A DNA stretch of 64,000 bases, taken from positions 62,001 to 126,000 of the forward strand of contig NW_026856555.1 of NCBI RefSeq assembly GCF_026571515.1, given 5' to 3'. This document shows positions 25,644 through 61,635 of this stretch, piece by piece. The first letter of the stretch is position 1; each line of letters begins with the position of its first letter. The notes under the pieces are model-generated. The model ran no database searches, had not been told where the DNA came from, and was given only the letters and a program-made list of their open reading frames with translations. This stretch comes from Ruditapes philippinarum (lineage: Eukaryota). Both the position numbers and the translations under genes were made by a program.

Positions 25644-27980
25644 ATGTTTACAATTGTAAATTATCCTCAAGTTCATTATCATCGGAGGGACGCCTCGGAG
25701 CCTCGTCCTGAGATTATCAACCATCGGAATGATCCAGACAGTAAAAGATGGTCCGAGAAGTTGCGGAATGAAGAGACAACTTATAAACATCTGAAACAGC
25801 ACCGCGATGAACTTCTAGAATCAGAGATAAGATATAAAAAGACCATTAAACAATTGGAGAAAGAAAAGGCAGAGCTTATCAAAATTTATGAACCTACATA
25901 TGATGAAAATAAAGTACTGAAAAGTATTATAGAGCACGGACCGGATGCTGTTAAGATGAAAAAGTTACGTAAGGCCAGGAAAGAGTTGGGTGAAGAAGTA
26001 GATACACTAAAAGATGAAAATAAAAGGTTAACAGAGCAAATGCAAGAGCTGATAAAGAAAAATGAACCCATGAGAGATAACTTATTAGAAAAGAATTGGC
26101 ACGATGTCCTTTCCGAAAGTAAGAAAACGAAAGAAAATGAAACTGTAGTCGCACAGGGACCTTTTCCCGCAAAAGATAATGAAAAGGGTAAGAAAGTCCC
26201 GGAAAAGAAAAATATGAAGGAAGACGACGAGTATGATTTACAATTAGATACTGTCGAAAAAGAAATTCAGATATTGTTAAACAATGTGAAATATATAAAG
26301 AAACAGAAAGAAAAACTGGATTATGCTATCTTGATGAGTAAAGGTGCGATCGTCAGAAACTCTGTTCTAGAGAAAGCAATATATGACAAACTAGATGAAG
26401 ATTTAACAAAATTTAAAACCGAATTGGATATTGCGAAAAGTAAACACGATGATATAAAGGAACAAATTGAACAAAAAGAGGAAGATAAGGCCAAACTTAA
26501 AACAGATCCTGTAATTAATTCTGATAATAAAACAGGAAGTGAAAAAACGATGGTTTTAGATCAACCTGAAACGTACACAACAAGAGAAACACAAACGGAA
26601 ACTTTAACTGAACAGAAACCTGTTGAAACAGACCAACATAAAGTAAAGAAAAAGCGAACAATAAAATCAAATTCAAATATTGCTGTACAGACCGATTTCC
26701 CAAACGTTTTAGATTTAAAGAGCATAAACCAAGAAGCTATGAAATATATAGAACAGTATGAAATCAAGAAATCCAAAATACATGAAGCTAAATTTAGTAT
26801 GTCAGAGAAAGTGTCTTCAACTCAAACGCGTAAAAACTATGCAAAGAAATTGGTAGTTAGGCGACAAGAAAGTCCAATGATGGATCGGACGTCAAATGAT
26901 AGTATGAAACAAATAAATAAGGTATTTCTTAATAGAGTAGATCAACCTCGCAAGAAAGTTCAGATGCCAACTAACGCACAGAAGAGAATGGACGAGGCTT
27001 TATATGCGAGGGAAGAAGAGAATGTGGACATAGTCGACAGGTCAGCAAACAAGGAGAAGAAAAGAAGTAAGTCACTTGCTGCAACTGGTGGTGATAGCGC
27101 TAACAGAGTTGTGAAACAAATTAACAGTCAAGGGAAAATCAAAGATAAACAGCAGCTACCGACTAAAGACGTAAGCCATACAGAAGAAACAGTTCCAATG
27201 AAATCAAATCAGAAACTAAGTAAAATGAACAGAAATACGCATGTTGAACATTTGCCTAGACTTAGAAATACAAACATGTCCTATGCACAATCAAATTTTC
27301 AAAAATCCAAGATTGAACCAAAGAGTGTTGATCAGTTGAAGAGGGAACAGGATATCTATGATTATGAAAACATGATTATGAACCCAAAAGCAAATGTTGC
27401 GAATCCAGCAGGAAGACTGCAAAAACCTAAACTCGATCGAAACCGGCTTGGTAATATAAAACAGTCAAGATTTAAATCAAAAAGTAGTTTAGATATCAAT
27501 CAAGCATCGACACATTCTAGAGCATCTGCTAGGAAACATAGGCTACCTGTTACTTTACCACCTATAGATAGGATTTCAATAAGGTCAGGATCTGTAGACT
27601 CGTGGAAAAGCGAAAGCGACTTACCCGTCTTCTCAGAGAGTGAAACTGGTTCAATCAAACCGATAAAAGATTTCAAATTAGTCATCAAAAAGAAGAAGAA
27701 TTTAATGCATTTAAGAGGTGTGCTTGACGGAGAGGTTATTGAGAAACGAGACGAAAGTGCGTATGATGAGGTGCTGCATGATCTGCACAACCAACAAAAG
27801 CAGTCTGCAAGGGATGTTTATCAAGAATTTAATAACACGGTGCATAATTTTCGCGATAAAAAATATAACGCTAATGAGAAGCAAAAACATACGAAGAAAA
27901 GACACGAACCTCCTTCAGATATCATAGAACAGGCACCATTAACATTTATAGAAAGACCATCTTTGGAAAGGGAATTATAG
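25644..27980 (+). CDS. Uncharacterised coiled-coil protein, cluster member CC1 (778 aa)
   Basis: Long ORF; first in-frame ATG lies after acceptor tatttcttcag| (25612); N-terminal ~270 aa align with CC2/CC3; low-complexity tail; AATAAA at 28001. Confidence 0.9.
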   Translation: MFTIVNYPQVHYHRRDASEPRPEIINHRNDPDSKRWSEKLRNEETTYKHLKQHRDELLESEIRYKKTIKQLEKEKAELIKIYEPTYDENKVLKSIIEHGPDAVKMKKLRKARKELGEEVDTLKDENKRLTEQMQELIKKNEPMRDNLLEKNWHDVLSESKKTKENETVVAQGPFPAKDNEKGKKVPEKKNMKEDDEYDLQLDTVEKEIQILLNNVKYIKKQKEKLDYAILMSKGAIVRNSVLEKAIYDKLDEDLTKFKTELDIAKSKHDDIKEQIEQKEEDKAKLKTDPVINSDNKTGSEKTMVLDQPETYTTRETQTETLTEQKPVETDQHKVKKKRTIKSNSNIAVQTDFPNVLDLKSINQEAMKYIEQYEIKKSKIHEAKFSMSEKVSSTQTRKNYAKKLVVRRQESPMMDRTSNDSMKQINKVFLNRVDQPRKKVQMPTNAQKRMDEALYAREEENVDIVDRSANKEKKRSKSLAATGGDSANRVVKQINSQGKIKDKQQLPTKDVSHTEETVPMKSNQKLSKMNRNTHVEHLPRLRNTNMSYAQSNFQKSKIEPKSVDQLKREQDIYDYENMIMNPKANVANPAGRLQKPKLDRNRLGNIKQSRFKSKSSLDINQASTHSRASARKHRLPVTLPPIDRISIRSGSVDSWKSESDLPVFSESETGSIKPIKDFKLVIKKKKNLMHLRGVLDGEVIEKRDESAYDEVLHDLHNQQKQSARDVYQEFNNTVHNFRDKKYNANEKQKHTKKRHEPPSDIIEQAPLTFIERPSLEREL

Positions 27981-28389
27981 TAGAAGTAGAAAAAGACACC
28001 AATAAATTGATAAAACTTTTTTTTTAAGCACCATATAAATCTTGATATTTTATTCAGTAAGTGTGTATGCTACTAATAACACAGCAATTAAAGTGAACGA
28101 ACGCAGTGAAAAAAAAAATATAGTTATAAACTTCCATAACTTCAACACAATGCAAAACAATTCAATGTCATGTAATTTAAAGTGATTTAGTACAAAATAA
28201 TATAATACAATACTTAATATTCAATGTAATACTTGATACTATGTTCTTAAAACTAAATAATCTAGATATTCGTAGACTCACACTATACCAAGGTGTCTTC
28301 ACATATAAATAAAAAGATTCTTTCCCACAAAAGTTTGAGGAGTTCTTCAAAACAAATTTAATTCTATCAAATTGCAAGGTTCGTGGCTT

Positions 28390-28745
28390 TTTTACCAAAA
28401 CATTATTATCATATTTTATCATATATATCATCTGTAATTATGCGCAGTAAAGTTTCGTAATCAAGGCCGATAATATCAGACACTTCCGAAAAGTCAGTCT
28501 TCGGTCGACTTTAAAAGTTCGTTGAATCGACGCCAAAGATGATGTCCTCTTTGTTCTTTCTCGGCCATACCTGTAGTCATCCTCTAGGTCAGTCCTTCCA
28601 TTTATTAGCCTTTTTATGCCATTTAAGTACCAGTGCGCGGCTCATTGAAACATTGCATCTGTTCTTCTTCAACATTTAAAAGTTTCCCTAGGCCTTTGCC
28701 TTAATCCTGAACAAACTGTTTGTCCGCGCGATTTTCAGGTCGTTC
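28390..28745 (-). pseudogene. Decayed mariner-type transposase, N-terminal DNA-binding region
   Basis: Across frameshifts the minus strand reads ENRADKQFVQD*GK / MSRALVLKWHK / R.INGRTDLEDDYRYGR / DRRLTF / EVSDIIGLDYETLLRIITDD. This follows the mariner pattern EQRa.iKF..lGK..SR..VfeWhkRF..GResleDd.RsGRP..DRRlT.reia..gis...Il.edL. Confidence 0.7.
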
Positions 28746-29454: not shown

Positions 29455-29720
29455 TCCAATACAATACAATACAATAGAAATCAGTATAAAACAATTCAAT
29501 TTGATAGAAAGGAATACAATGAAATGCAATTTAAAATAATACTAAACATAACGCAACATAATGCAATACCGTATACCTTATCATTCGGTACTACAAAAAA
29601 ATGTAATACATTGTTTTGCAATGGAATGCAATGTAAAAAAATAATGTAAAAGAATACTACTAATGTACAACGCAAAACAATGCAGTATCGTATACCTCAT
29701 ACATTCAATACACTGCTAAA
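29455..29720. repeat. Degenerate (AATAC/AATGC)n pentanucleotide repeat
   Basis: caatacaatacaatacaat core with decayed copies downstream. Confidence 0.65.

Positions 29721-30005: not shown

Positions 30006-30007
<2 letters not shown>

Positions 30008-30035
<28 letters not shown>
30008..30035. repeat. (ATTG)n microsatellite
   Basis: Directly visible. Confidence 0.9.
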
Positions 30036-30036
<1 letters not shown>

Positions 30037-31214: not shown

Positions 31215-33572
31215 ATGTTCACAGTCGTGCCGAAACCCGAGGCTCCTGATATTGAAGATTACCAGCCTGCTAAAGGGGAACCGGCACCACAAATAATAAA
31301 CCACCGCCAAGAAAATCAAACTCATAAAAAGAAAAAGGCAACATACGAAGATATAAAGGAACAAAGAGATAGTTTACTTGAATCCGAAATGAAGTATATC
31401 AAGAGAATAAAAGAACTTGAAAAAGAGAAAGAAGACCTACTTAAGCTGTACGAACCAACTTACAAAGAAAACAAACAGCTCAAAAGTCATTTGATGCACG
31501 GACCAGAATCACAAAATATAAAAAAGTTAAAACAAGAGAAGAAGAAAATCTTGAGCGAATTAGAAATAGTGAACACAGAAAATGCTGAATTACAAGACAG
31601 AGTAAAGGAACTAGAAAAAATGTTCCTTTCCGAAAAAGATTATTATCGTGAAAAGAAATGGCGGGAAGCAATCGAAAAGGGACGAAAGAGACGCGAAGAA
31701 AAAGATACCTTACTGTCAACACAAGGGCCGTTTGCCTCTTCAAGAAAACCGAATAAGAGAGATTTGAAATCTGTTACTGACGAAGAGTTCGAAAAGCAGG
31801 ATGCTCATGATTTACACATCGACACACTTGAGAAAGAAACACAGATACTTTTGAATAAAATAAGAAGAATGAAGCAAAATAAAGGAAGCATAGATTATGC
31901 TTATTTTATCGGAAAAGGAGCAATTACCAGAAATTCATCAGTAGCTAAGGCCATCAACGAAAAACTAGATAAAGATCTGGAGGAATTCGAAAACCGCCTA
32001 GAAAATTTGAGACAGAAAACTAAACAGCTTAAGGATATTTCTTCAGAGGATTTGGAAGTACCAGTTGAGACAGCACAAATTAAACAAACTGGGAACAAAT
32101 ATTTTCGAACACGACAAACACAAACTAATTTAGTTGATGAACAAATACGAACGAATCCTCCCTCTAACAATAATAATTTAGGTGATAAACAAGGCATATC
32201 AAAGCCGATTGCGGAAACACGAAACATTTCGACAAAGGAGAGCAAGAAAAGACAGTTGATGATTAAAAGAAATACTCCAGATTATGACATAGTTCATGAT
32301 AAATATCATGCATCTGATGATATACGTACATTTACTAGACCTCACGCGAAAGAAGTTACTCATGAATCGTATGAAGATCAAAGTGCAACGAAACAGGGGT
32401 CAAGGAATATAAGACGAACTCCGGATGAAACTGAAGGTTTTGGTTCACCTATTGCGGAACATTGGCGCCATCTAACCATAAAGCTAAATGAAGTGGAAAA
32501 GTTTGGCGGTAAAACACCCTTTGCATACAGAGATAAGACTAAAGGGAGGGCATCTGTTCAGTCAAGTAGTTCAAGAAGACAAGAATCTATGTCTTATGTT
32601 CCGAAAAGAATACCGTCAACTAGACCGAACTCTGAAGAAATCTTGTCTGCCTCAGCAAAGAGTCGCAGAAGTGCAAATTCAGAAATTTCTAAATCTAGTT
32701 CTAGAGATTTATCCCCGCAACTTTCAGCCAATTTAGAATCAATGTCTGACATTGACGAACTAGATTATGAATGTGGTGCTGACGATATGTTGGACACTAA
32801 AAAGGAAATTAATATTGTTGAGTCACTAGAGAAGGCACAAAGAAAAACAACTAATTTGGGCGAAGAAATCCGGTTTATACCAAGGCAACGTAGCTGGGAA
32901 ACGGGGAGAAATGCAAGATGTAATAATGAACAAAATGGAAGATACGCCAACGGTTTTGAACCGATCAGTCGCTATAGGAAAACGAACAAAAAGTCTAATG
33001 ATGCTAAACTTATTGAAGGTGAAACTAAAACCATGATTTCAAATGAAAAAGGTACGTCAGATGATCAAAGTGAGGCAATTAATGAGAGTGGAATAGCAAA
33101 AGATGTAAGGTTTAAGCAGAGGACATATTCTGGTGATAAAATAAAACGAAACACACAGGCGATGCCTTCTGAGCTTAGATTTAAAAATAGAAACACAAGA
33201 GATTCAAAAGTTCCAAGGGCAAAGGGATTGACAGAAGATAATCGAAGACATGCAGGAGAGGCACCGGATGAGGAAATGGTTTCTTCACGAAACATTTCTG
33301 CGTATGACGAAGTGTTAGCCGATGTTTCAAAGCAATACAAAGATCATGAAAGAAGACAAATGTTTCAGTCGAGAGTACAATATAAAAACGAGGATAAAAA
33401 CGATTATGACCGGACGCAACAAACCAGAAATATAAATGATGAACACGGAGTTGATTTGCCTAACTACGGGGTTAAACATGTTGAGAAAACAGTATTTGAA
33501 AAGGGACAAGGAGGCGCGTCTGTAAGCAGTGGAAAATCCCGTGAATACATTTACAATTTAGATCTGTTATGA
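31215..33572 (+). CDS. Uncharacterised coiled-coil protein CC2 (785 aa)
   Basis: ATG 31215 (MFTVVPKP) follows acceptor acattccag| (31199); shares IINHR, RDSLLESE.KY.K.IKELEKEK, HGP, TQGPF, EKETQILLN, IDY...GKG.I.RN and AYDEVL with CC1/CC3; AATAAA at 33585. Confidence 0.9.
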   Translation: MFTVVPKPEAPDIEDYQPAKGEPAPQIINHRQENQTHKKKKATYEDIKEQRDSLLESEMKYIKRIKELEKEKEDLLKLYEPTYKENKQLKSHLMHGPESQNIKKLKQEKKKILSELEIVNTENAELQDRVKELEKMFLSEKDYYREKKWREAIEKGRKRREEKDTLLSTQGPFASSRKPNKRDLKSVTDEEFEKQDAHDLHIDTLEKETQILLNKIRRMKQNKGSIDYAYFIGKGAITRNSSVAKAINEKLDKDLEEFENRLENLRQKTKQLKDISSEDLEVPVETAQIKQTGNKYFRTRQTQTNLVDEQIRTNPPSNNNNLGDKQGISKPIAETRNISTKESKKRQLMIKRNTPDYDIVHDKYHASDDIRTFTRPHAKEVTHESYEDQSATKQGSRNIRRTPDETEGFGSPIAEHWRHLTIKLNEVEKFGGKTPFAYRDKTKGRASVQSSSSRRQESMSYVPKRIPSTRPNSEEILSASAKSRRSANSEISKSSSRDLSPQLSANLESMSDIDELDYECGADDMLDTKKEINIVESLEKAQRKTTNLGEEIRFIPRQRSWETGRNARCNNEQNGRYANGFEPISRYRKTNKKSNDAKLIEGETKTMISNEKGTSDDQSEAINESGIAKDVRFKQRTYSGDKIKRNTQAMPSELRFKNRNTRDSKVPRAKGLTEDNRRHAGEAPDEEMVSSRNISAYDEVLADVSKQYKDHERRQMFQSRVQYKNEDKNDYDRTQQTRNINDEHGVDLPNYGVKHVEKTVFEKGQGGASVSSGKSREYIYNLDLL

Positions 33573-33594
33573 TGACTTCTATTGAATAAAAAAC

Positions 33595-35384: not shown

Positions 35385-37109
35385 ATGTATACGGTGGTAA
35401 ATCGTCCTGAGGTGGAGGAACATGAACGACAACCGGGAGAACCATTACCATTGATAATTGATCATAGGAAGGGAGATAAGTGGAAAAATCGTCACCGAAA
35501 GGAACAACTCCCATACGACACACTGAAAAAACACCGTGATACACTTTTAGAATCAGAAATAAAATACAAGAAGACAATTCGTGAGTTGGAAAAGGAACGG
35601 GATGAACTCGTTGCTACCTACGAGACTGCTTATCAAGAAAACAAACAATTGAAAAGCATTCTTGAACATGGTCCAGATGCAGCGAAGTTAAAGCAGCTAA
35701 ATAAAGATAAAAAAGAGCAAAAAGGTCTGATAGAAAAACTTCAGGAAGAAAACAACGAATTGGGAGAGAGGTTAAAGCGGTTAGAAAAGATTGAAAAACT
35801 AACTGATCCAGGCAATATTATGCTTGAGAGAAATTGGAAGAAAGCGTTGGACAAAGTGAGAAAGATGAGAGAGGAAGAGGAGGCTATTCCAACGCAAGGT
35901 CCATTTGCTGGTGGTAAACTTTTTAAGAAGAAGCGCATTGCAATAGATGATGCCCAGGTAGAACTTGATACCTACGATCTACAATTAGATTCTGTTCAAA
36001 AAGAAACACAAATTCTTTTAAATAAAGTAAAACAACTCAAACGCGAAAAGGAACAAATCGATTATTCGCTGATTATGGGTAAAGGACATGTAGTTAGAAA
36101 TGCTGTTGTTGCAAATGCAATAAGTGAAAAATTAAACAGGGACTTGAATAAATATGCAATACGCCTAGAAAAGCTTAAGCTTAAGCATAAAAGTGCAAAG
36201 ATGTACGTAGAAGATGTGAGAGTTGTCCTTGGACATCCAATCAGAAGGTCATTTGCAAGTCTACCGATAGAGGTCAAATATCTTGAGCCAGTAACGCCGC
36301 TAAAACCCGATTCTGCAAATTTGAACGAAAATGAAAAGAAAGATGATACGCCACCTAAAGAGAAAAAAGTTCCTTGGTCTTTATCTACGAAATTATCGCC
36401 CCCTGAAAACAAAAAGCAGCCTGTACCTGAGAGAGATAACTGGATACCACCAAAGCAGTTTGAAAAACCAGGAACATATACAAAAATCCATCAAAAATCT
36501 GGCCCGCCATTAGATCAAAAAGCTACGCAAAATGTTTCATTGAATTCATCCGATGTCAACGACTCATTAGACAAAGGAGAAACAGTAAACCTTAACTTCC
36601 GAGATGACATGCGAATACAAAAACCAAGGCATAGAATAAAAACTTCAAGCCAAGGAAGTCTCATACGAACAACAAAAGCTCAATCTATGCGTGATTCCTG
36701 GGTCAAAACAAAGGATGCTTCAAACAAAACTGGTGGTCCAAAGACCAACAACAATAATTCAGCTAAGAGAAGAAACAGTTCAAAGACTGTAGATAGTAAT
36801 CTGAGGTTTGATGAGACAAACAACAGAGTTCAGTTGACAGCAAGGACTAATAAAACCTTCCCAAATAACCGACCTGTCTACCGACAACGTAAACCGGAAG
36901 TTAAAGATAATGAGACATACGACGATGTGCTTGAATCGTTAAAAAGTCAGACGTATTCCGTTCGTGAACAAATGGATCAAAATTTTGCATCTCCTGAACC
37001 TATTGACTTTAACGGCGATGGGCGCAATGTGCATCGAGGGGATATGTATACTATGGGGAATACTGGGATAAGAGACAAAAACTTCTTACCGGTGAAATTT
37101 GTTATGTAA
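35385..37109 (+). CDS. Uncharacterised coiled-coil protein CC3 (574 aa)
   Basis: ATG follows acceptor tgtatttctag| (35344); HRDTLLESEIKYKKTIRELEKE, KSILEHGPDA, TQGPF, YDLQLDSVQKETQILLN and TYDDVL align with CC1/CC2. Confidence 0.9.
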   Translation: MYTVVNRPEVEEHERQPGEPLPLIIDHRKGDKWKNRHRKEQLPYDTLKKHRDTLLESEIKYKKTIRELEKERDELVATYETAYQENKQLKSILEHGPDAAKLKQLNKDKKEQKGLIEKLQEENNELGERLKRLEKIEKLTDPGNIMLERNWKKALDKVRKMREEEEAIPTQGPFAGGKLFKKKRIAIDDAQVELDTYDLQLDSVQKETQILLNKVKQLKREKEQIDYSLIMGKGHVVRNAVVANAISEKLNRDLNKYAIRLEKLKLKHKSAKMYVEDVRVVLGHPIRRSFASLPIEVKYLEPVTPLKPDSANLNENEKKDDTPPKEKKVPWSLSTKLSPPENKKQPVPERDNWIPPKQFEKPGTYTKIHQKSGPPLDQKATQNVSLNSSDVNDSLDKGETVNLNFRDDMRIQKPRHRIKTSSQGSLIRTTKAQSMRDSWVKTKDASNKTGGPKTNNNNSAKRRNSSKTVDSNLRFDETNNRVQLTARTNKTFPNNRPVYRQRKPEVKDNETYDDVLESLKSQTYSVREQMDQNFASPEPIDFNGDGRNVHRGDMYTMGNTGIRDKNFLPVKFVM

Positions 37110-41201: not shown

Positions 41202-42272
41202 TCAAACTATATATTTTGAAAGACTTTCCAAATGACTGGATGACAGAGATTGCATATCCTTATCTTTTGATTGCTGCCTTTTCAACATACGCTTGTACAA
41301 TTCTCTGTACCCGAGACCGTATCTTAAAAATGGAATCTCTGGCGACTCTTTTGAAAATGATGAAATGAACCCCGAACGCTTTTTCTCTGTCACATGAACA
41401 AAAGAATCACTCTCAATCTTTGGGAGAAAAGTTGGAATACTTTTCTTATTTATCACTATTGTTTCTGTTTTGGACTTTACACAAGTAGATGTTTTAGCTA
41501 TCTCCGGGTCTCTGGCTTGTACTTGTGTTTCTAAAACCTCCAACTTAGAAATAAGCCATTTGTTTTTATTTTTTAATTTATCTAGTAAAGTTTTAAGCCT
41601 TGCATTTTCACTTTCGAGAGTTTTAAGTCTCTCAGAACTGGTTATGACCACCAGCTTGTCTAATGGGTCTTTGTATTTTACTTTATCTGTTTTGACATTT
41701 CGAAAACAATCTACATCTTTTACATAATGTCTTAACATTTTAACTTCATCTTCCAACCTTTTAATCCGATCCTTATACGTCTTTACTTCTTTCTTTATAT
41801 TTCGATTACTTTCTCTATTATTTTCATAAATTCTTAGCTCTTTATTCTCATCTGTTAATTTTCTTATTTTCTCTTTATTCCGAATATCCTCTTCTTTAAG
41901 TCTATTTCTCTCTTTAGAAACTATATCATAAGGTTCGTTATAAATATCAACGTCACTTCCATTTCTTTCGTATTTATCCCGCAACCCTTCTATTTCCGAC
42001 TGTGATTCCTCAAATGTTTTAAGTAAAGAAATAGTACCATTTTCTAACTCCTTAATGCGCTTTCTGTAACCATCCTCCGATATTTCTAGTTCCTCGATCT
42101 TACGTTTGTACTCTTCCTCCAAGTTAAGCATTTCCAAACGTTCCTTGCATATATCCTCATACCACAATATAAATCTTTCTTCCGCTTCTTTGTCAGAGAG
42201 TCCAGTTCTCGTTTCAAGCATATCAAGTTCACGATGAAGATCATCTGTGCTATCATTATAATCCTGTTCCAT
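41202..42272 (-). CDS. Uncharacterised coiled-coil protein CC4 (356 aa)
   Basis: First ATG at 42272 (MEQDY); acceptor gtatttttttaacag| at 42381; has WYEDICKERLEMLNLEEEYKRKIEELE and PYDIVSKERNRL modules; shares S.KEAE.RF.LWYE.I with CC5. Confidence 0.85.
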   Translation of the reverse strand: MEQDYNDSTDDLHRELDMLETRTGLSDKEAEERFILWYEDICKERLEMLNLEEEYKRKIEELEISEDGYRKRIKELENGTISLLKTFEESQSEIEGLRDKYERNGSDVDIYNEPYDIVSKERNRLKEEDIRNKEKIRKLTDENKELRIYENNRESNRNIKKEVKTYKDRIKRLEDEVKMLRHYVKDVDCFRNVKTDKVKYKDPLDKLVVITSSERLKTLESENARLKTLLDKLKNKNKWLISKLEVLETQVQARDPEIAKTSTCVKSKTETIVINKKSIPTFLPKIESDSFVHVTEKKRSGFISSFSKESPEIPFLRYGLGYRELYKRMLKRQQSKDKDMQSLSSSHLESLSKYIV

Positions 42273-42989: not shown

Positions 42990-43700
42990 TTAGTAACCCT
43001 CCTGTGAGCATATTAACACGCCTGTAAATATGACAATAACACTCCTGTGAATATAACACTACCCCCTGTTGTGAATAAGGGAATACCCAACTGTGAATAT
43101 TAACATTAACATTCCCGAGAACATTTCAATGACATTCCTGTGAATGTGAGAATTTCACATTTGTGAATTTGTCACTACCCCCTTCTATGAATATAATCAT
43201 TGTAAAATTCCTGTAAATGTAATGATAACACTCCTGTGAAGATTATACTACACCCTTCTGTCGAGATAACTAGTATAACACGCCTGTAAATCTAACAACA
43301 ACACTCCCGTGAATACCACACTACCCCCTCCTGTGTATTAAGCAAAAAAACTACTTTGAATATAAGAATAACGTTCTCGTGGACATATCAATAACACTAC
43401 TCTGAATATGACAATCACACTCTTGTGAATATAGCACTAACTCCTCCTGTGAATATAACAATAGCACCGAAGATAATATAACAAAACTTTATGTGAACAT
43501 AGCAATACCTTCTTCTGAATGTAACAATTCCCTCCAGACATGTGAATATAACAATTAACTCCCATGAGTATAACAATAACACTACTGTGAAAAATGCAAT
43601 ATCGTTGCCGTAAAACATAGTAGAACATGATAAAAAAAAGCAGTAAAACATTATGTGAACAAAGCCAAACACTATTTTAATCAAACAATAACATTATTGT
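42990..43700. repeat. Degenerate ~21-23-bp minisatellite (CTCCTGTGAATATAACAATAACA-like)
   Basis: Roughly 30 decayed units with recurring ctgtgaatat. Confidence 0.85.
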
Positions 43701-45680: not shown

Positions 45681-46604
45681 ATGGACATTGTTTCAAATGT
45701 AAAATCAAAAGAAAACAGTGTAGAAGATAATGAAAATATTGTTCAAAATAATAAGAAAGATAATACAGAAAAATTGAATAAAGATGACAACGAACACAAT
45801 AACGGAACAGATGATAAGATATCGCAGCAAAATATGAAAGTGTTGCATGATTCGGATGTTGAATGTCAATCAAGCGAAGAAGAAAACATTGAAACAATAA
45901 GCGGAAAGGAAGCGGAGACTAGATTTTTGCTTTGGTATGAAGGCATACAACGTAGGGAGGAATGGTACAAAAGACGAATTGAAGAATTGGAAAAACTTGA
46001 GGAAAAATATAAACAAACAATTGCAACTTTAAAAAACAATGATGAAAAATTACAACAGAGATACTCTAAGGCGTTAATTGAAATCAAAGTGCTAAGAAAA
46101 AAGAACATGCTGCCTTCAGATGATAAGGAATTCGTGGAATCTTATATATCCCTGTCTGCTGAAAGAGAAAATTTAATTATATCTTCTCGTGAAAATAGTG
46201 ACACGATCAAAAAGCTTAAAAAGGAAATGCTTACTATGAGAACGAGGTTAAATTCAAATCATGCAAGAAACCCTGCACTTCGAAGCGTTTCAACTCAAAC
46301 AAAAATGGACAAGTTTCCAACACATTACTCACAGAGTGTCAAAACTGAAACTGATGGAAATAACACTCTCCTGAAACATCAAGTTAGTGAAGCGAAACAA
46401 TTTGGAGGAGGACAAATTGTCAGATCTAAAGCAAACTTTACTTATTCAGCCTCGTATTCAAACGAAAAAGTACAGGGAAAAGAAAGAAGGGAGCAGGTTA
46501 TTGAAAATAACGTTAGGAGAAATCGGCAAAGAAACAAAGAAAGTGAACCGATTTATTTTCCAGATATACGACAGAAGCCAGATCACATGATGTGGAGATA
46601 TTAA
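45681..46604 (+). CDS. Uncharacterised coiled-coil protein CC5 (307 aa)
   Basis: ATG 45681 follows acceptor tttctctaacag| (45666); ISGKEAETRFLLWYEGI..YKRRIEELEKLEEKYKQTI aligns with CC4. Confidence 0.85.
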   Translation: MDIVSNVKSKENSVEDNENIVQNNKKDNTEKLNKDDNEHNNGTDDKISQQNMKVLHDSDVECQSSEEENIETISGKEAETRFLLWYEGIQRREEWYKRRIEELEKLEEKYKQTIATLKNNDEKLQQRYSKALIEIKVLRKKNMLPSDDKEFVESYISLSAERENLIISSRENSDTIKKLKKEMLTMRTRLNSNHARNPALRSVSTQTKMDKFPTHYSQSVKTETDGNNTLLKHQVSEAKQFGGGQIVRSKANFTYSASYSNEKVQGKERREQVIENNVRRNRQRNKESEPIYFPDIRQKPDHMMWRY

Positions 46605-50010: not shown

Positions 50011-51513
50011 ATGACTACCTCATACAGCCATTATCCACCCCCAATTAAAAAATTCGGAGATGGCAGTACATTTGATAAGGCTGCCTATGCTGCTTATGAA
50101 GCCGTTAAATCCGAAAGAGATGCTCTAAAGGAGATTGAAAAAACCTCTAAACGTAGAATAGAAGCTCTTGAAAAAGAGACTGCGGACTTGCTATCCTCCT
50201 ACCAAGGAATATATGATGAAAACAGAGTACTGCGTAGTAAAGTTGAGCATGGTCCAAATGCACAGAAAATTCGCAATTTCCGAAATGAAATTAAACGATT
50301 AGAGGAAAAGGTTTCAGCACAAAGAACTGAAAATAATATGTTAAGTGAAGAAATTGCATCGTTGCAAAAACAATTTAATATCATATCTGAGGAAAAGAAA
50401 AGAATTGATGATGCCTTTAAGATGGAAAGATCGTTGCATATTGAGAAAACGACTAACGCTGAGGAAGAAAATAAAGATTTATACGCAAAGATAGAGAGAT
50501 TAGAAAGACAACAAGAAGAATATGAAAGAAGAGTAAAGAACTATGACGAGGAATCTGAAGGGCTACTTAGTAGATACAAAGAACTTAAACGAGACAATCT
50601 TAAGATGGAGACGAAATTCAAGAAACAAAAGGATATGGCAGAAGAAGAAATTCGTGAAACGAAAGAGTTAAACAAAGAAATGGCTAAAGAAATAATTGTG
50701 CTTAAAACAAGACAAGCTAAACTGCAGGCAGAATTTAATTCAGTAAAGTTGGATTACCAGGCGGCCGAGAAACAAATAGATTATCAAAATAAAGAATTAG
50801 ATGTTTTTAGAACCCAATCTCAACTTTTGCATAGGAACGTGAAAATATCTGAACGTGAATACAACTCAATGAAAGAAGAGCTACAATCAGTTGAAGAAAT
50901 GCTTGTTGACGCAAGGAATTTCGGCTTTGAATCTGTCATTGACGAAAGAAGAAACCTGAAAAAGAAAGAAAGAAAGCAATTTAAACGTATCGATGATTTA
51001 GAATTGCAAGTAGAAGAATTAACTAGGGAAAATAATGACTTAGAAAAAGAAGCAAACGAATACAGGCGTAAAATGGAAGCAGCAATCATTGAAAGGGAAA
51101 ATCTCCTTTTTGCAGAGACAACTTTAAAACGAAGAATAGAAGTATTAGAAAATGCAAATATTGATCTGGACAGGCGAACAAAGTTTATGTCTAGCAAAAG
51201 CAAAACGGGACTGGTTGTTAAAATGCCAGACGAGAATATCAAGAACTTGGAGAAAGAAAAGGCTTCTCTATTTGCAAAATGTCGATACCTCGAGACACAG
51301 AATAGGCGTTATGCAAGGCGTATCAAAGAACTAGAAAATGGAATGGAAATTGATGACTTTGATAATGAAAATGCATCTCGTCTTTTCAAATCGAGAGTAA
51401 CATCGGACCACGTGCTTCATGCCGATATGCCAACTTTGTCCAATAGAGATCCAAAATCATCATATCGACGAAAAGCCAAACTCCCTAGATCACTTCCAGC
51501 TCCTTCTGTTTGA
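50011..51513 (+). CDS. Uncharacterised coiled-coil protein CC6 (500 aa)
   Basis: ATG follows acceptor ttatatttcag| (49988); AYEAVKSERDALKEIEKTSKRRIEALEKE..YQGIYDENRVLRSKVEHGP aligns with the CC1-3 core; two more module copies near the C-terminus. Confidence 0.9.
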   Translation: MTTSYSHYPPPIKKFGDGSTFDKAAYAAYEAVKSERDALKEIEKTSKRRIEALEKETADLLSSYQGIYDENRVLRSKVEHGPNAQKIRNFRNEIKRLEEKVSAQRTENNMLSEEIASLQKQFNIISEEKKRIDDAFKMERSLHIEKTTNAEEENKDLYAKIERLERQQEEYERRVKNYDEESEGLLSRYKELKRDNLKMETKFKKQKDMAEEEIRETKELNKEMAKEIIVLKTRQAKLQAEFNSVKLDYQAAEKQIDYQNKELDVFRTQSQLLHRNVKISEREYNSMKEELQSVEEMLVDARNFGFESVIDERRNLKKKERKQFKRIDDLELQVEELTRENNDLEKEANEYRRKMEAAIIERENLLFAETTLKRRIEVLENANIDLDRRTKFMSSKSKTGLVVKMPDENIKNLEKEKASLFAKCRYLETQNRRYARRIKELENGMEIDDFDNENASRLFKSRVTSDHVLHADMPTLSNRDPKSSYRRKAKLPRSLPAPSV

Positions 51514-56477: not shown

Positions 56478-57536
56478 TTAGTCATAGACTTGTGAATCAG
56501 GAAGCAAATATTCATAGTCAAATTTAACAGGCCTCTCTTCAAAATTTACATGTTGTTGTTTATTTCCCTTTGGAATACTTTTAAAATCCTTTGTGAGTCC
56601 CATACTTTTGACATTTTTACGTGCAATTTGATGTTCTAATTTCTTGATTACTTTCTTCAATGTATCATTTTCAGCTTGAACTTTTTTCACCGCTTCTCTT
56701 TCATTCGAATTTTCAAATTCTCGAAGAGTGTGTTTCAGAGATTCATTTTCTGTCCTAAGTTTCTTTAATTCTGCTTTAGACCTCTTTTCTTTTGTAATTC
56801 TATCTTTTTCTTCAGCTTGACTTGTAGGTTTAAATTTTTCTTGAAGAGCTTTAAGTTTGTCTTGAAACTTATCACTTTCATTTTGCTTTTCAATTATTTC
56901 TTTTTCCAGCCTTATAATTCTTTTCTTATAACCGCCTTCTGCCTCCCTTAGTATCCTTCGATCTTCGAAAACTCTACTGTATGGTTCAAGAAGCGGGTCA
57001 TTACCTGTATCCATTTTCCGTCTTAATCTTTCATTATCCTCGTACAACTTTGTAAACTCTCCAAGTACTCGTTCAACTTCTTGTTCCAGCTCTGCTATAC
57101 GTTTCTCGTATTTTTCATTTAGTTCTAGAAGATGCGCCCTCTCATCCATAAACCCTTCATATTGCTGCACGTTCATGATCTTGATTGTTGGTTTATTTGA
57201 CTCAGCCCCGTTCTCTAAAGTTTGTTTTTTCACATTCTTCTGCCTCAGATTACTTAAAGCTATTTGGTTCTTTTTAACTTTCCCTGATTCGAGATCTTTT
57301 GATTTTTCCATCCAAGTCTTTTCGTCTTCAAAATTGTTTGACTCATGTTTATCGTGTGAAGTATTGTTTTCCTCGTGTTTATGCTTAATCACTAAAACAT
57401 CTACATCTTTTGGTATCGGTTTTCTTTTAGACTTCGGTTGTGTTTTTAATTTGTTGTCTTCTAAAGAGGGTATTTTATTAAACTTTGCCCGAAATACTTT
57501 GCTCTTTGCAGGTATGGTGCTTGCAGCATTGCTCAT
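56478..57536 (-). CDS. Uncharacterised coiled-coil protein CC7 (352 aa)
   Basis: First ATG 57536 (MSNAAS) follows acceptor tttttgaatttcag| (57546); two modules, YEGFMDERAHLLELNEKYEKRIAELEQE..LYEDNERLR and PYSRVFEDRRILREAEGGYKKRIIRLEKE. Confidence 0.85.
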   Translation of the reverse strand: MSNAASTIPAKSKVFRAKFNKIPSLEDNKLKTQPKSKRKPIPKDVDVLVIKHKHEENNTSHDKHESNNFEDEKTWMEKSKDLESGKVKKNQIALSNLRQKNVKKQTLENGAESNKPTIKIMNVQQYEGFMDERAHLLELNEKYEKRIAELEQEVERVLGEFTKLYEDNERLRRKMDTGNDPLLEPYSRVFEDRRILREAEGGYKKRIIRLEKEIIEKQNESDKFQDKLKALQEKFKPTSQAEEKDRITKEKRSKAELKKLRTENESLKHTLREFENSNEREAVKKVQAENDTLKKVIKKLEHQIARKNVKSMGLTKDFKSIPKGNKQQHVNFEERPVKFDYEYLLPDSQVYD

Positions 57537-57642
57537 TTTTACGATCTGAAATTCAAAAAGTGACGACAATTTGAAAAGGCAATATGAGTTTAAGAATGCT
57601 AACAATTCTTCGACAGTATCAAAGCGAAATCACAGATAATAG

Positions 57643-58169
57643 TTTATTTTATTCTTTCCAGTGTTTTACTGTAATATATCAGATGATTATATTCTGACAT
57701 ACCATTTGTGAATTTTATAAAATATAATTTTCACTGTAGCCGGACGAATGCGGATGAAAAGAATATCATAACTAATTGGAATAACAGGCTAAAGTAAATG
57801 CAGTCATACGTAAATTTTGCTTCTTTAGGAAAAGAAAGTCGATGTCATTAGATCTATATATCATGTTATAAATGTAACAAAATTAGAGAGAATTAACAGA
57901 ACTGATGATGTGACGTCATAAAGTGATGACGACATAAAGGAGAATGCGCGACGTTACGCGTCAAAATCAGTAAAAAAATACTTAAAAACACTAAAAAGGG
58001 TGAAATAGACGCAACAATTTATTTTACATATAAGGTTGAAATATATTTCATTCGTGAACACCAGCTATTCTATTTTCACTCGTGACTACGCACTCGTGAA
58101 AATATTGCATCTGGTGTTCACTCAGTTAAATATATTCAATCTTACCTGCAAAGCAAACAAACATCCTCC
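57643..58169 (-). mobile_element. Inverted second copy of the 53329-54151 element (lacks ~300 bp of the interior)
   Basis: Reverse complement of 53329-~53595 joined to ~53890-54151. Confidence 0.8.
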
Positions 58170-58319
58170 AAATATTCAAGTGTAAAGACAAAAGCTTTTT
58201 CTGTATTATATGAATGAGTATACAATATCGGTGTATCTTAATTGGTTATTTTATTACAAAGTTATGAAAAATTAATTGAAACATAAAGATTTCTACAAGG
58301 TGTATACTTTATAAAGAGC

Positions 58320-58623
58320 TGTCACAGGGTGAGAAAAATGGGCAGCCAGACCGGGACTCAAACTAGGACCCATTGAACCGTGACACACTCCCCTGCTATA
58401 TCGAAATTCGTCCTCATTTTTTTACGGCTACATAGCAATGAGAATTAAACTCCGAGCTATAGTCAGTCACGGTCGAATGTTGGGCGCCAAATGTAAATGT
58501 GATGCGTGACCTCGACTCGAACCCCGGCACCCCCAAGACACCGTTCCGCGGCTCTACAGACTGATCTATCCGGCGGCTTACATATATTCTTCCCTATAAA
58601 GTGAACAGTTCTGAACCGTGACA
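58320..58623 (-). mobile_element. Miniature non-autonomous LTR retroelement (TRIM) with tRNA-like LTRs
   Basis: Minus strand: TGTCACGGTTCA...ACA (58623-58492), TT, PBS TGGCGCCCAAC (58489-58479), short interior, PPT-like AGCAGGGGAGTG, second TGTCACGGTTCA...GACA (58385-58320). The 5' LTR contains GCCGGATAGATCAGTCTGTAGAGC and GGGTTCGAGTC. Confidence 0.7.
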
Positions 58624-59579
58624 AGCGCTTGACAAAAAGATTTGATGATAAAATGACTTCGTGTATCTAAAGGCGGTTTTAAATATACTGCTATTGAAGT
58701 AGTTCATACATCTCGTTTTCTATCTTACGTTTAGTAATTTGGTGTTTTCTTTTGAATTTCGTAAGGTTTGATCAACTAGAATCGACCTAATTACAGAACA
58801 AAATGACTTTAATAAAGATATGTATATTGTTATTTTTTTTACCAAATGTAAGGCTACATATGAAAATCTTACTTGATATTCACATCCAAGCTCAACAATG
58901 GCAGCCCGTTTAACTTTCTCGCGGAATAATGTAAAAATGAAACATTGAGTTATTTTTAAACTATCGACTGATATATGAAATCGTTATACTTCTCCTTTTA
59001 AATTTGAAATTTGATATCATACTTTTAATTGAACGCTACTGATTCGTTAAACTTTCTTTGTAATAAACCGATCTTAAAAAAAAGAAAAACCTTAAGACAA
59101 AACAACTTAAGAAATAAAAATACCTGAATGATCGTTAAAGAATGAGATATGTTTGACAAATATTTTTTAAGTTTAAAGTTTAAATCTTAAGATATAAAAC
59201 CTCATAAGTTGTTATCTTATTACTAATGGAAATTTGGGTAAGTTTACTTTGATATATATGTAAAGCAATTTTATAATATATATCGTATTTTTAACATGAT
59301 TTTGTATAACTATTAAGATATAACAGCTAATATATAATTGTGGATTTATCATATGCATTTTTTTCTTGTTTTCTTCTAACTTTTTAGGTATTTACATTTA
59401 ACGTTTTTATATATAAGTATCTTGTAAAAAATACAGGTGGAACTCGTAAAGGATGTCATACGAAAAGAAATTTTGTGATTGTCAACCATCGTCTAAAGTA
59501 TAAAAAAAAATCATGCATTATTATTGTTTTTCACTAAATGGAAAATTCATTTTCTGTTTTATTTTATTTGCATTTTCAG

Positions 59580-61635
59580 GGTTTCTTCGAAAATAAAAAA
59601 TTAAGAAAAAAGGTTTTTTGGGAAGGAAAGAAAGCCCCAAAATCGAAGCCCAAAATTGAGATTTTTTAAAACAAGAAAAAGAAAAAATTTTTAAACAAAA
59701 GTATGCCCGAAAAAAGGGGGAAAAAACAGGGAAAATTTGAGCATAATTTTAATTTTATTTAAAAAAAATCTGTTTTCCCAAACTTACTTTAAAAAAAATC
59801 AAGCTTTTTTAAAAATCAACTTGATACAGAAGAACCATATGAGAAAATTTACAATGAAAGAAAACAAGCTTATGTCAGGAAAACGCGGAAAAACACTTTA
59901 AAAAAATTAAACACCTTGAAAACGAACTATTGAGAAGAGAAAAGAGGGAAAAAAATGATCAGAAATGCTTGAAGCGAAAAAGTAGAGACAGAAGGAAGGA
60001 GAAGACCTTCTTAAAGACATAGAAAACACAAAAAAGATAAAATTAAAAAAACTTGAAACTGACAAGAGAGAAAAGCAAGAAGAAAAAATAAAGGAACTTG
60101 AAACTGAGAGAGAAGAACTCGAAACTCAGAAAGACGAGCTACAAAAGAAAAATGACGAATTTGAAGATGAATTTATCAAAATGAGAGAAGATTTTGCCAA
60201 AATAAAGGCTGAGAAGGAAGATGTTTTAGTAAACATTAAAAAGAAGAGAAAATAATGACCAAATTGAAACGGAAACAGGGCAATAACATTGAAGGATCTT
60301 TAAGGGCATCGAAAAAAAACGAAAATCGAAACCAAACTCCGATTGGAATGCTTATTAGAAAGTGAAGCATTGAAGTCTGAAAATGAGTCTTTATTCCGCG
60401 CTAACGAAGCAAAGAAAGACGAGATAAATGAAATTCAAAAAGAAGTTGCCAGTATAAAAAAAGAGTTGCAACTAGAACAACTCAGATATCATAAAATAAA
60501 GCAAGAATGGGATGAGGAAAAGAGTAGGACAGAATTTGTACTAGTTAGCAAATCTGCTAAAAAGAGGCACCAAAGGGGTTTAGAATCATCTTTAAAGGAG
60601 GAAAACGACTCGGAGGATGAACATGTTGTCGGAGTTTTAGAAGCTGCTAAACTGGAAAAAGAATCTATGATTGCAAAGGAGAATGAGCTTAAGAAACGCG
60701 TGAAGCAACTCCAAATTGACAAGGATGAACTTTTCAGGTCTGGAACAACTTTGTTCGCTGAAAATAAAACTTTGAAATCAAAGTATGACCAAATTATAGG
60801 AGAAAGATCGATGCTCCTTCAGGTGGAAGCAGCTCTAAAACGGAAAGTGAAAGAACAGGAGGATGAAATGAAAGACTTAAAAAAGACTATCGATGATTTA
60901 TATTATCAGAACATGGCGATCAGAACAAATGAAGAAAACGAAAATAAAAAAAGTTCATATGTAGTTCTTATGGGTAATGAGATGATTAAAAAGCTTGAAC
61001 GCGAGAAAAGCGCATTACATAGACGAGTAAAGTTTTTGGAGAAAGAAAATAATGAAATTGAAACAAGAGTTGTAGAATTGGAAAGACAGTCAGCAGATCT
61101 TGTCAACTATTCAAAAAAGTATGACAAATATTCCACATTTCCAGAATCTAATAGAAGTAGAGACAGCAGTTACATAGAGAAACCGTGGTCCCGGGGTCGA
61201 GATAATAGAGATACCGTAAGGTCACATGATCGTGAAAATAGAGACACAGCAAGGGGACAATATCATCATAACAAAGAAACTCCACGTTCCCGGGAAAGGG
61301 TAAACGATAGGACAAGAGAGCCTCCTAGCGATAGAAACCCGCATCGTTTATCTGGTCGTGATCAAGGAGGAAGAAGACACCTTGACCAGCGCCCACCATC
61401 TGAAAAAATGATGTCGTTTCACGAATACAGAGAAAAATCAAAATACGGAACAGGTGTTCCAACAAAAAGCCCCGATTACTACAAAAATAACATGCCACCG
61501 TTCGCTAACGCTCCTTCAAGACAGCCAAGTATGATGGCACCTCCAAGCATACATTCCGGGCAAGGTCATGACTCGAGGTTTTCATTTCCTCCACTAGGAT
61601 CTCGGACTGCCCGCTCCCCGAGACATGGACATTAA
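59580..61635 (+). CDS. Uncharacterised coiled-coil protein CC8; 3' ~430 codons intact, 5' ~760 bp disrupted (assembly error or pseudogenisation)
   Basis: Acceptor tttatttgcattttcag| at 59579. Remnants EPYEKIYNERKQ (~59832) and KIKELETEREELETQKDELQKK (~60085) lie upstream of the intact ORF, which carries YDQIIGERSMLLQVEAALKRKVKE and MIKKLEREKSAL (cf. CC6). Confidence 0.7.

What the first reader, a model, noticed from the sequence alone, without database searches (positions are those of the whole stretch)
25644..61635. Tandem cluster of eight paralogous single-coding-exon coiled-coil genes of no recognisable family
Seen: eight long ORFs in 36 kb, spaced ~2-5 kb apart, with no other intact gene between them (orientation + + + - + + - +). 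They look unrelated at first, but all carry versions of one module and have the same gene layout. Subgroups are CC1-3, CC4/5 and CC6/8, with CC7 intermediate. Long frames have stayed open despite heavy divergence. Inference: an old, selected, lineage-restricted gene family expanded in place, possibly encoding co-assembling structural or cytoskeletal proteins (sperm/cilia is a hypothesis only). Automated pipelines tend to give such proteins generic 'myosin/SMC-like' labels, which would hide the family.
Basis: partly seen in the sequence, partly recalled or inferred. Interest (0 to 1): 0.85.

Follow-up and report, generated by a model that had tools for sequence, protein, structure and literature searches.

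The report
Mollusc-only coiled-coil gene family, tandem cluster
A clam chromosome carries a tandem array of at least ten expressed, selectively maintained genes for rod-shaped (coiled-coil) proteins that share one signature module, belong to no described protein family, are so far seen only in molluscs, and have no known function.

Summary
All eight ORFs are at the stated coordinates and strands. No other ORF of 90 aa or more lies between them, apart from antisense shadows of the eight themselves and one 91-aa ORF with no Pfam match.

All eight carry one 55-96-residue module: sY..v..ER..Ll.aE..YKkRI..LEkE...l...Y.ENK.Lr.K, followed by EHGPDA in CC1-3 and CC6. Profile tests against heptad-preserving shuffles support homology for each of them. 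CC5 joins only through CC4.

Corrections to the finding:
- The array runs past the window, with two more genes (CC9, CC10).
- One unlinked 1191-aa gene (CX) is the only other copy in the 1.4-Gb genome.
- CC8 is not a clean single exon. It has an upstream exon, and its 5' third is garbled in the reference.

A search of 1.84 billion proteins gave only 255 hits. All named strong hits are molluscs, and the gastropod and oyster/scallop hits are all CX-type. Orthologues of CC3, CC6 and CC10 occur in Mercenaria, Mactra, Dreissena or Mya, so the array predates the Venerida-Myida split.

CC7 is transcribed and spliced. CC8 variants give pN/pS of about 0.1. No Pfam, PDB or fold match passes threshold.

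Function is inferred only: intracellular dimeric rods whose module sets pairing.

The parts
25644..27980 (+). CC1 coding exon (778 aa). The module is at 25776-26057. A helical head of about 290 aa is followed by a disordered basic tail and a C-terminal AYDEVL motif.
   Evidence: orthologues P0051 and P0047
31215..33572 (+). CC2 coding exon (785 aa). The module is at 31335-31622.
   Evidence: identical to P0019; orthologues P0057 and P0055
35385..37109 (+). CC3 coding exon (574 aa). The module is at 35511-35789. The AF2 model has helices 44-95, 97-140, 142-165, 196-231 and 233-281, and the tail is disordered.
   Evidence: 77% identity to Mercenaria LOC123562562
41202..42272 (-). CC4 coding exon (356 aa). 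It has the RFILWYE head motif and module copies at 42084-42161, 41961-42080 and 41664-41939. The family's conserved C-terminus is SKY[IM][IVL].
   Evidence: orthologue P0085 at 63%
45681..46604 (+). CC5 coding exon (307 aa). It is a fast-diverging CC4-type paralogue with a weak module at 46137-46331. The conserved CC4 C-terminal motifs are lost.
   Evidence: only one relative (94% identity) among 5.8e9 proteins
50011..51513 (+). CC6 coding exon (500 aa), an all-rod protein. The EHGP-type module is at 50089-50373, with degenerate copies at 50926-51078 and 51088-51339. The AF2 model has helices 22-80, 84-302, 308-392 and 407-442.
   Evidence: 80% identity to Mercenaria LOC123562561
56478..57536 (-). 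CC7 coding exon (352 aa) with two module copies, at 56997-57167 and 56709-56987.
   Evidence: orthologue P0036 at 69%
57546..58872 (-). CC7 5'-UTR intron of 1327 nt. It is GT..AG on the minus strand, and its acceptor lies 9 nt before the ATG. The 5'-UTR exon starts at 58873.
   Evidence: joint 57545->58873 with ends CT..AC, seen in contigs of two runs from two studies (table 5)
60343..61635 (+). CC8, the intact 3' part of its coding sequence (430 codons). Module copies are at 60661-60786 and 60775-61089, followed by a Pro/Arg/Ser-rich tail.
   Evidence: 19 synonymous against 8 non-synonymous variants
59580..60342 (+). CC8, the 5' third of its coding sequence. It is colinear with the 626-aa orthologue P0041, but the reference interrupts it with at least 4 in-frame stops and at least 1 frameshift inside A-rich homopolymer runs.
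   Evidence: RNA contigs of two studies lack single bases at 60026, 60030, 60062 and 60066 and replace 59867-59996 and 60226-60352 with shorter stretches
59136..59579 (+). CC8 upstream exon (59136-59237, ending ...ATGGAAATTTGG) and its intron (59238-59579, GTAAGT...CAG).
   Evidence: the contig piece ends exactly at 59237 (table 8); sequence read

Best explanation
What is shown. This is a tandem array of paralogous genes. Eight lie in the window and at least ten on the contig. They encode intracellular alpha-helical coiled-coil proteins of an undescribed family so far seen only in molluscs.
- The family is defined by one module of about 55 residues. Its invariant residues (Y4, R11, L14, I25, L28, with Y21 nearly so) fall on a 3-4-3-4 spacing, that is, on the a/d core positions of a heptad repeat.
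- CC1-3 and CC6 follow the module with a helix break, EHGPDA.
- A long (about 1200 aa), unlinked, intronless member, CX, is the form shared with gastropods, oysters and scallops.
- The array members have separate orthologues in Venerida and Myida, so most duplications predate that split.
- The genes are transcribed, have a 5'-UTR intron just before the ATG, are under purifying selection, and lack signal peptides and membrane segments.

What is inferred. CX looks like the ancestral form, and the array most likely arose from it (or a common ancestor) by tandem duplication. Copies then changed by internal module duplication or loss and by gaining different tails.

The proteins most likely form parallel dimeric rods. 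A conserved core that contains a buried Arg and two Tyr would set register and partner choice. This would allow homo- and hetero-pairing among paralogues, much as keratin or other filament and scaffold paralogue sets pair. The divergent tails would attach the rods to other structures.

A centrosome or cilium-type cytoskeletal role is the leading guess, but only a guess.
For: Homology of all eight genes.

Family extent in this genome. The module occurs only in the C5042 array and at C5185:287556-291128.

Specificity and taxon range: there are 255 hits at E<=1e-3 among 1.84e9 proteins. Every hit with a best domain of 40 bits or more falls in a CC or CX orthogroup, and about half match a strict form of the signature pattern. 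All named ones are molluscs.

Age of the duplications: orthogroups are supported at 95-100% SH-aLRT, with Dreissena, Mya, Mactra and Mercenaria inside them.

Linkage in other species: CC3 and CC6 orthologues are adjacent or near-adjacent gene models in Mercenaria (LOC123562562 and LOC123562561) and Mactra (ACF0H5_000332 and 000334). Orthologues lie on one chromosome in Dreissena and Mya.

Transcription and splicing.

Selection: (CC8 pN/pS about 0.105).

Helical rods and heptad periodicity: (z 2.3-15).

Intracellular and host-like: no signal peptide or membrane segment, and host-like GC3.

Core placement of the invariant residues: read directly from alignments A3.

Centrosome or cilium lead: language-model look-alikes of CX are CCDC158, CEP128, CEP135, CEP89, ODF2 and rootletin.
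Against: - No experiment or structure bears on pairing, and only monomer models were possible.
- The tissue and cell type of expression are unknown. One raw RNA run shows depth 1-4 and another shows none.
- The Atlas look-alikes share only 129-152 of 256 features, below the level typical of true family members, and only 3 of the 10 best share a family.
- CC5 has lost most conserved features and has only one close relative, so it may be decaying.
- CC8 and CC9 carry frame disruptions in this assembly, which could be real.
Confidence: 0.6

Rival explanations
1. The family is a fast-evolving mollusc branch of a known metazoan centrosomal or ciliary coiled-coil family, such as CEP89, CCDC158, CEP128 or ODF2. 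It would then not be a new family, and its function could be inherited from that family.
For: The language-model neighbours of CX are almost all centrosome or cilium coiled-coil proteins, with scores of 0.92-0.94. One CC6 orthologue (P0023) carries a precomputed PF28159 (CEP89) hit.
Against: The three CC6 orthologues with a precomputed Pfam hit each have a different family (GAS, CEP89, CCDC39), which is typical of generic coiled-coil noise. No Pfam model in the local library passes its cut-off; this library includes CCDC158, CortBP2, Rootletin and HMMR. The genome's true CCDC39 and GAS8 genes lie elsewhere and are multi-exon, and those models do not hit the array. The deep HMMER search returned no signature-bearing non-mollusc. 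The Atlas feature overlap is low.
Confidence: 0.2
2. The module is a docking site for one common partner, such as a motor, a kinase or a microtubule-associated factor. It would not be a pairing-specificity element, and the paralogues would be alternative adaptors that do not co-assemble.
For: The module is conserved far better than the flanking rod in every paralogue. Tails and module copy number differ widely, as they do in adaptor families.
Against: The invariant residues sit on the a/d heptad positions, the buried interface, and not on the exposed b, c and f positions. This is read from A3 and the signature list. No partner is known.
Confidence: 0.15
3. The resemblance of CC4, CC5, CC7 and CC8 to CC1-3 is only the generic similarity of unrelated coiled coils, so the locus is a chance neighbourhood of several families.
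For: Pairwise BLAST scores for several pairs (for example CC1-CC4, CC5-CC8 and CC7-CC8) are no better than shuffles.
Against: Profile scores are 37-68 bits, against at most 20 bits in 500 heptad-preserving shuffles and no hit on reversed sequences. Non-heptad signature residues are shared in register. In the 1.4-Gb genome the profile hits only this array and CX, although the genome encodes many coiled coils. Only 255 of 1.84e9 proteins reach E<=1e-3.
Confidence: 0.03
4. Some members (CC5, CC8, CC9) are pseudogenes or decaying copies, not functional genes.
For: CC8 has at least 4 stops and a frameshift in its 5' third. CC9 changes frame between C5042:131688 and 131889. CC5 has lost the CC4 C-terminal motifs and has no orthologue beyond one 94% relative.
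Against: RNA contigs from two independent studies cover the CC8 region and lack the extra homopolymer bases of the reference. This points to local assembly error. The intact part of CC8 shows pN/pS of about 0.1. CC5 keeps a 307-codon open frame in AT-rich DNA.
Confidence: 0.15

Closest known systems
Long centrosome, centriole-appendage and cilium coiled-coil proteins (CEP89, CEP128, CEP135, CCDC158, ODF2, rootletin)
   Same: They are intracellular, heptad-rich rods of 500-1400 aa with disordered tails. They are also the nearest language-model neighbours of CX.
   Different: No significant sequence or profile match was found. They are not known to contain the Y..ER..L..E..YKKRI..LE signature. 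Those genes are single-copy and multi-exon; these form a tandem array with intronless coding sequence.
GAS8/DRC4 (Pfam PF13851) and CCDC39 (PF24161), axonemal coiled-coil proteins
   Same: Sub-threshold profile similarity covers the module region in 9 of 15 CC6 orthologues, with best E of 1.9e-5. One orthologue has a precomputed CCDC39 hit.
   Different: Scores stay below the curated cut-offs. The true GAS8 (contig C13047) and CCDC39 (contig C10710) genes of this genome are elsewhere and multi-exon, and genome scans with these models do not hit the array.
Keratin type I and type II gene clusters (my own knowledge)
   Same: They are tandem arrays of paralogous coiled-coil genes whose products pair with each other through conserved helix-boundary motifs. 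This is the functional analogy proposed here.
   Different: There is no sequence relation: the Filament model matches only at sub-threshold level in 5 of 15 orthologues. The IF consensus motifs were not looked for specifically. Keratin genes have several coding exons, and co-assembly is untested here.
Dreissenid byssal thread protein family tpf1 (PMC10691215)
   Same: It is a cluster of large intronless coiled-coil genes in an imparidentian bivalve, with no recognisable domains. Its loci also show assembly errors that interrupt single exons.
   Different: tpf1 proteins are 354-467 kDa, 19-20% Asn, restricted to Dreissenids, found in the byssus gland and fibres, and proposed to be horizontally acquired. 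The proteins here are 35-140 kDa and 5-9% Asn, lack signal peptides, have host-like GC3, and occur in both bivalves and gastropods.

Membership tests
Unnamed mollusc 'YKKRI-module' coiled-coil family (defined here) | A module matching the family profile, with the core signature Y-x6-[ED]R-x2-L-x3-E-x2-[YF][KR][KR][KR][IV]-x2-LE | tested here: met
   CC1-3 and CC6 score 99-104 bits against the A3 profile, though they are among the rows it was built from. Independent HMM: CC7 scores 46, CC4 40 and CC8 37 bits, with 0 of 500 shuffles reaching these. CC5 scores only 15.7 bits directly but 68 bits against the CC4-family HMM.
Unnamed mollusc 'YKKRI-module' coiled-coil family (defined here) | Alpha-helical heptad rod and an intracellular location (no signal peptide or membrane segment) | tested here: met
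   AF2 models of CC3 and CC6. Power at a 3.5-residue period has z 2.3-15. Maximum N-terminal hydropathy is 0.37 or less, against 2.57 for the neighbouring GPCR.
GAS8/DRC4 (PF13851) | Score at or above the curated cut-off of 32.3 bits | tested here: not met
   CC6 scores 12.6 bits. The best orthologue has E of 1.9e-5, below the cut-off. The genome scan finds GAS8 on C13047 and nothing in the array.
CCDC39 (PF24161) | Score at or above the curated cut-off of 27 bits | tested here: not met
   The own-genome scan hits only a multi-exon gene on C10710. No window protein hits the model.
CEP89 (PF28159) | A match to the CEP89 profile | not testable with these tools
   The model is absent from the local Pfam library. 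The only evidence is one precomputed hit on orthologue P0023 and an Atlas neighbour.
Myosin tail, SMC and intermediate filament families (the labels that pipelines give) | A match to Myosin_tail_1, SMC_N or Filament at the gathering score | tested here: not met
   None is listed for any window protein at E<=0.1. Filament appears only at sub-threshold level in 5 of 15 CC6 orthologues.
Dreissenid tpf1 byssal coiled coils | Size above 350 kDa, Asn 19-20%, Dreissenid-only, secreted fibre precursor | tested here: not met
   Sizes here are 307-1202 aa and Asn is 4.8-9.4%, with no signal peptide. The family is present in gastropods and pteriomorph bivalves. The tpf1 features come from PMC10691215.

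The most novel reading that the evidence does not exclude
The array encodes a mollusc-specific, co-assembling filament or scaffold system. It would be a set of paralogous rods that pair through a conserved core module containing a buried Arg and Tyr. It has been kept as a tandem cluster since before the Venerida-Myida split (several hundred million years, by my own knowledge of bivalve phylogeny). It would build a lineage-specific cytoskeletal structure, for example in ciliated or germ cells, that has no counterpart in model organisms.
Probability: 0.2. Interest if true: 0.7.

Novelty: new member of a known kind. Interest (0 to 1): 0.45.

Why it matters
Molluscs have many unannotated, taxon-restricted genes, and pipelines hide this family under misleading names (myosin-8, trichohyalin, CENP-E-like, girdin-like, myb-like).

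Defining the module gives a clean handle (an HMM) to annotate about a dozen genes per heterodont genome and one gene in gastropods and oysters.

The family is also a tractable case of an ancient gene spawning a long-lived tandem array with domain shuffling. If the paralogues co-assemble, this would be a new cytoskeletal system specific to a major animal phylum.

There is a practical point too. The CC8 and CC9 frame breaks mark local homopolymer errors in this assembly.

Tried and rejected
- Pfam on all window proteins, 15 CC6 orthologues, CX, CC9, CC10 and long gastropod and oyster relatives gave only sub-threshold generic coiled-coil hits.
- PDB sequence searches with the CC6-family and module profiles returned GCN4, tropomyosin, designed coils and BICDR1 at E of 5e-6 or weaker. 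All of these are generic.
- A Foldseek search of the CC3 model against PDB found no match at E<=10.
- ESM Atlas on the CC3 head returned bacterial and unnamed clusters and was uninformative. On CX it gave centrosomal look-alikes, which are a lead only.
Direct synteny and orthologue DNA, and therefore dN/dS, could not be obtained.
- Literature searches for 12 orthologue identifiers returned 0 papers.
- Earlier findings of this scan held nothing relevant.
- Rfam found no RNA family in the window.
- Horizontal transfer, by analogy with tpf1, was considered and rejected. GC3 is host-like, 5'-UTR introns are present, and no signature-bearing bacterial hit was seen among the top matches.
- A transposable-element or viral origin was rejected. 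The orthologues are conserved and linked, the genes are under purifying selection, and no TE domains were found.
- I did not build or search a joined or repaired CC8 or CC9 protein. The pieces were compared only by laying the natural orthologues P0041 and P0039 on the DNA.

Full report
**Source.** The window is contig C5042:62001-126000 of a 1.4-Gb assembly with 15,874 contigs. GC content is about 30-36%. The best orthologues point to a venerid-like heterodont bivalve: CC3 is 77% and CC6 80% identical to Mercenaria mercenaria proteins.

**1. Observation**

Seven have a plausible ATG, at 25644, 31215, 35385, 42272, 45681, 50011 and 57536. In CC1-3 this ATG opens a conserved M[FY]T[IV]V start. 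CC8 has no ATG before codon 109.

With stop codons at about 7.5% of random codons at this composition, open frames of 300-800 codons cannot be chance. Between the genes there is no other ORF of 90 aa or more, apart from antisense shadows and one 91-aa ORF with no Pfam hit.

**2. One family?**

Pairwise BLAST against heptad-preserving shuffles and reversed sequences:

| Pair | Bits |
|---|---|
| CC1-3 among themselves | 186-229 |
| CC6 to CC1-3 | 61-70 |
| CC6 to CC8 | 55 |
| CC4 to CC5 | 53 |
| CC6 to CC7 | 39 |
| Shuffle maximum | about 33 |

These links are solid. The other pairs are at noise level, so profiles were needed.

- Thirty-four CC1-3 and CC6 orthologues align without gaps over about 96 residues.
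- An HMM built from them alone scores CC7 at 46, CC4 at 40 and CC8 at 37 bits. None of 500 shuffles reaches these scores, and reversed sequences give no hit. CC5 fails this test at 1.2 bits.
- A CC4-family HMM scores CC5 at 68 bits, against a shuffle maximum of 4.7. It also hits CC10 (49), CC8 (32), CC7 (31) and CX (22).
- Laid on the model, all copies show sY..v..ER..Ll.aE..YKkRI..LEkE...l...lY.ENK.Lr.K. CC1-3 and CC6 follow this with EHGPDA.
- Several proteins hold two or three copies.

By module, CC6 is sister to CC1-3. By overall architecture it matches CC8: the CC8 orthologue P0041 aligns with CC6 over about 460 aa.

**3. Extent**

Searching the whole genome with the module finds two more genes just beyond the window's end:
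- CC9, at C5042:131880-135485, an ORF of 1202 aa.
- CC10, at C5042:139252-141672, 807 aa.

It also finds one unlinked 1191-aa gene, CX, at C5185:287556-291128, and nothing else.

The array is bounded by an F-box/LRR gene (window 14724-15839) and a rhodopsin-type GPCR (C5042:153649-154659).

**4. Range and age**

A full HMMER scan of 1.84e9 representative proteins gave only 255 hits at E<=1e-3, so the profile is specific. Every hit whose best domain scores 40 bits or more falls into a CC or CX orthogroup, and about half of them match a strict form of the signature pattern. Lower hits are long proteins with many weak stretches and no signature; one example is an amphipod protein of 3829 aa.

Named members are all molluscs:
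- Bivalves: Mercenaria, Mactra, Dreissena, Mya, Crassostrea, Ylistrum, Argopecten.
- Gastropods: Biomphalaria, Bulinus, Elysia, Patella, Lottia, Haliotis, Babylonia.

All gastropod and pteriomorph hits are of the long CX type. A module tree gives supported orthogroups: CC6 98, CC1-3 95, CC8 100 and CC10 100 (SH-aLRT). Dreissena, Mya, Mactra and Mercenaria fall inside the CC3 and CC6 clades. The duplications therefore predate the Venerida-Myida split.

Linkage in other species could only be inferred:
- Gene identifiers are adjacent or near-adjacent in Mercenaria and Mactra.
- The contig is the same for the Dreissena orthologues and for the Mya orthologues.
- A CC6-like and a CC9-like protein come from contigs of identical length (157,599 bp) in an unnamed species, so probably from the same contig.

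**5. Expression and gene structure**

Fourteen probable RNA runs from seven studies hold about a third of the 6-kb stretch, which is roughly its exonic share.

CC7. Contigs of two runs from two studies cover CC7 and jump from 57545 to 58873. The ends are CT..AC on the plus strand, which is GT..AG on the gene's strand. This is a 1327-nt 5'-UTR intron whose acceptor lies 9 nt before the ATG, exactly where the sequence predicted it. Similar AG acceptors lie 9-40 nt before the ATG of CC1-6 and CC10. These are predictions only.

CC8 differs.
- A 2468-nt contig starts in an exon at 59136-59237. That exon ends ATGGAAATTTGG and is followed by GTAAGT. The contig resumes after the CAG at 59579.
- From 59580 to 60342 the reference is colinear with the 626-aa orthologue P0041 but has at least four in-frame stops and a frameshift within A-rich runs.
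- RNA contigs from two studies lack single bases at the same four positions and replace two stretches with shorter ones.
- I read this as local assembly error (about 70%), not pseudogenisation.
- CC9 has a similar frame change near its 5' end.
- I did not build or search a joined or mended CC8 or CC9 model.

Raw RNA reads give depth 1-4 in one run and none in another. Tissues are not known.

**6. Selection**

Variants listed between the reference and the RNA data are 19 synonymous against 8 non-synonymous in CC8 (pN/pS about 0.105). In CC7 they are 3 against 4. CC6 orthologues are conserved from end to end, at 59% mean column identity. In CC1-3 only the head of about 290 aa and a short C-terminal [ST]AYD[ED]VL helix are conserved.

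**7. Structure and properties**

- The AF2 model of CC3 has helices 44-95, 97-140 and 142-165, a loop carrying TQGPF, then helices 196-231 and 233-281, and a disordered basic Ser/Asn-rich tail.
- CC6 is a four-segment rod that breaks exactly at the GP of EHGPNA.
- Heptad periodicity is significant in all eleven proteins.
- None has a signal peptide or membrane segment, and GC3 is host-like.
- The invariant module residues (Y4, R11, L14, I25, L28, with Y21 nearly so) fall on a 3-4-3-4 spacing, the a/d core. This includes a buried Arg and aromatic residues (read directly).
- Core conservation argues for selection on the helix-helix interface. This is why I favour a pairing or register-setting role over a surface docking role.

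**8. Comparison with known families**

- No Pfam model reaches its cut-off.
- PDB sequence and fold searches give only generic coiled coils, or nothing.
- GAS8 and CCDC39, which appear as weak hits in orthologues, have their true multi-exon genes elsewhere in this genome and do not hit the array.
- CEP89 could not be tested because the model is absent.
- Language-model neighbours of CX are centrosome and cilium coiled-coil proteins with low feature overlap. This is a lead, not evidence.
- The only literature hit for intronless clustered coiled-coil genes in bivalves is the Dreissenid byssal tpf1 family. It differs in size, composition, secretion and range.

**9. Verdict**

The observation and most of the interpretation stand. 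This is a real, expressed, selected family seen only in molluscs so far, and it expanded in place. The finding needs three corrections:
- The array holds at least ten genes, plus one unlinked ancestral-type member (CX).
- CC8 has two exons and is broken in the reference.
- CC5 is a young, degenerate CC4 copy.

Function remains inferred. The finding is a sound new family of a familiar kind and is of moderate interest.

Noticed in passing
window 57640-58180 (inside the CC7 5'-UTR intron): A dispersed repeat of about 535 bp with an internal inverted repeat (query positions 379-522). The first look found more than 2,000 candidate copies in the genome, at about 86% identity. RNA reads and contigs pile up on it (depth 3,000-5,000 in contigs), and most run on into unrelated flanks. 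It looks like a MITE- or SINE-type non-autonomous element.
   Followed up: partly
window 14724-15839 (-): A single-ORF gene of 371 aa with F-box and leucine-rich-repeat domains (F-box E 1e-5, LRR_6 E 1e-12). It is the upstream neighbour of the array.
   Followed up: partly
L010:7649-8659 (+) = C5042:153649-154659: A single-ORF rhodopsin-family GPCR (7tm_1, E 8e-40), about 12 kb downstream of CC10. It bounds the array.
   Followed up: partly
L014, just upstream of the CX start codon (C5185, about 291126-291160, minus strand): CACGTGACGTCA lies about 30 nt before the ATG of CX. It reads as an E-box overlapping a CRE-like TGACGTCA. No splice acceptor is nearby, unlike the array genes. This suggests that the CX start codon sits in its first exon, next to the promoter.
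   Followed up: no
C5042:135687-136388 (+) (L009 and L012): A 234-aa open frame with coiled-coil-like sequence lies about 200 nt after the CC9 stop, in another frame. It could be a further small gene or a CC9 extension. The CC9 orthologue P0039 did not align there.
   Followed up: no
C5042:146329-146424 (+) (L010): Residues 742-773 of the Mya CC10 orthologue P0037 (970 aa) match here at 84%, about 4.7 kb downstream of the CC10 stop. This is either a further exon or gene, or a fused gene model in Mya.
   Followed up: no
window 43014-43591: A degenerate 23-bp tandem repeat of about 25 copies (59% matches) between CC4 and CC5.
   Followed up: no
window 22631-22780: A run of 150 N (an assembly gap or masked stretch) about 2.8 kb upstream of CC1.
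   Followed up: no
CC4-family alignment; window 41202-41216 for CC4: CC4 orthologues end in a conserved S-K-Y-[IM]-[IVL] C-terminus and share the motifs LVVITS.ER and FGLGY..IY. The hydrophobic C-terminal tripeptide resembles a PDZ-type tail ligand. CC5 has lost all of these.
   Followed up: no
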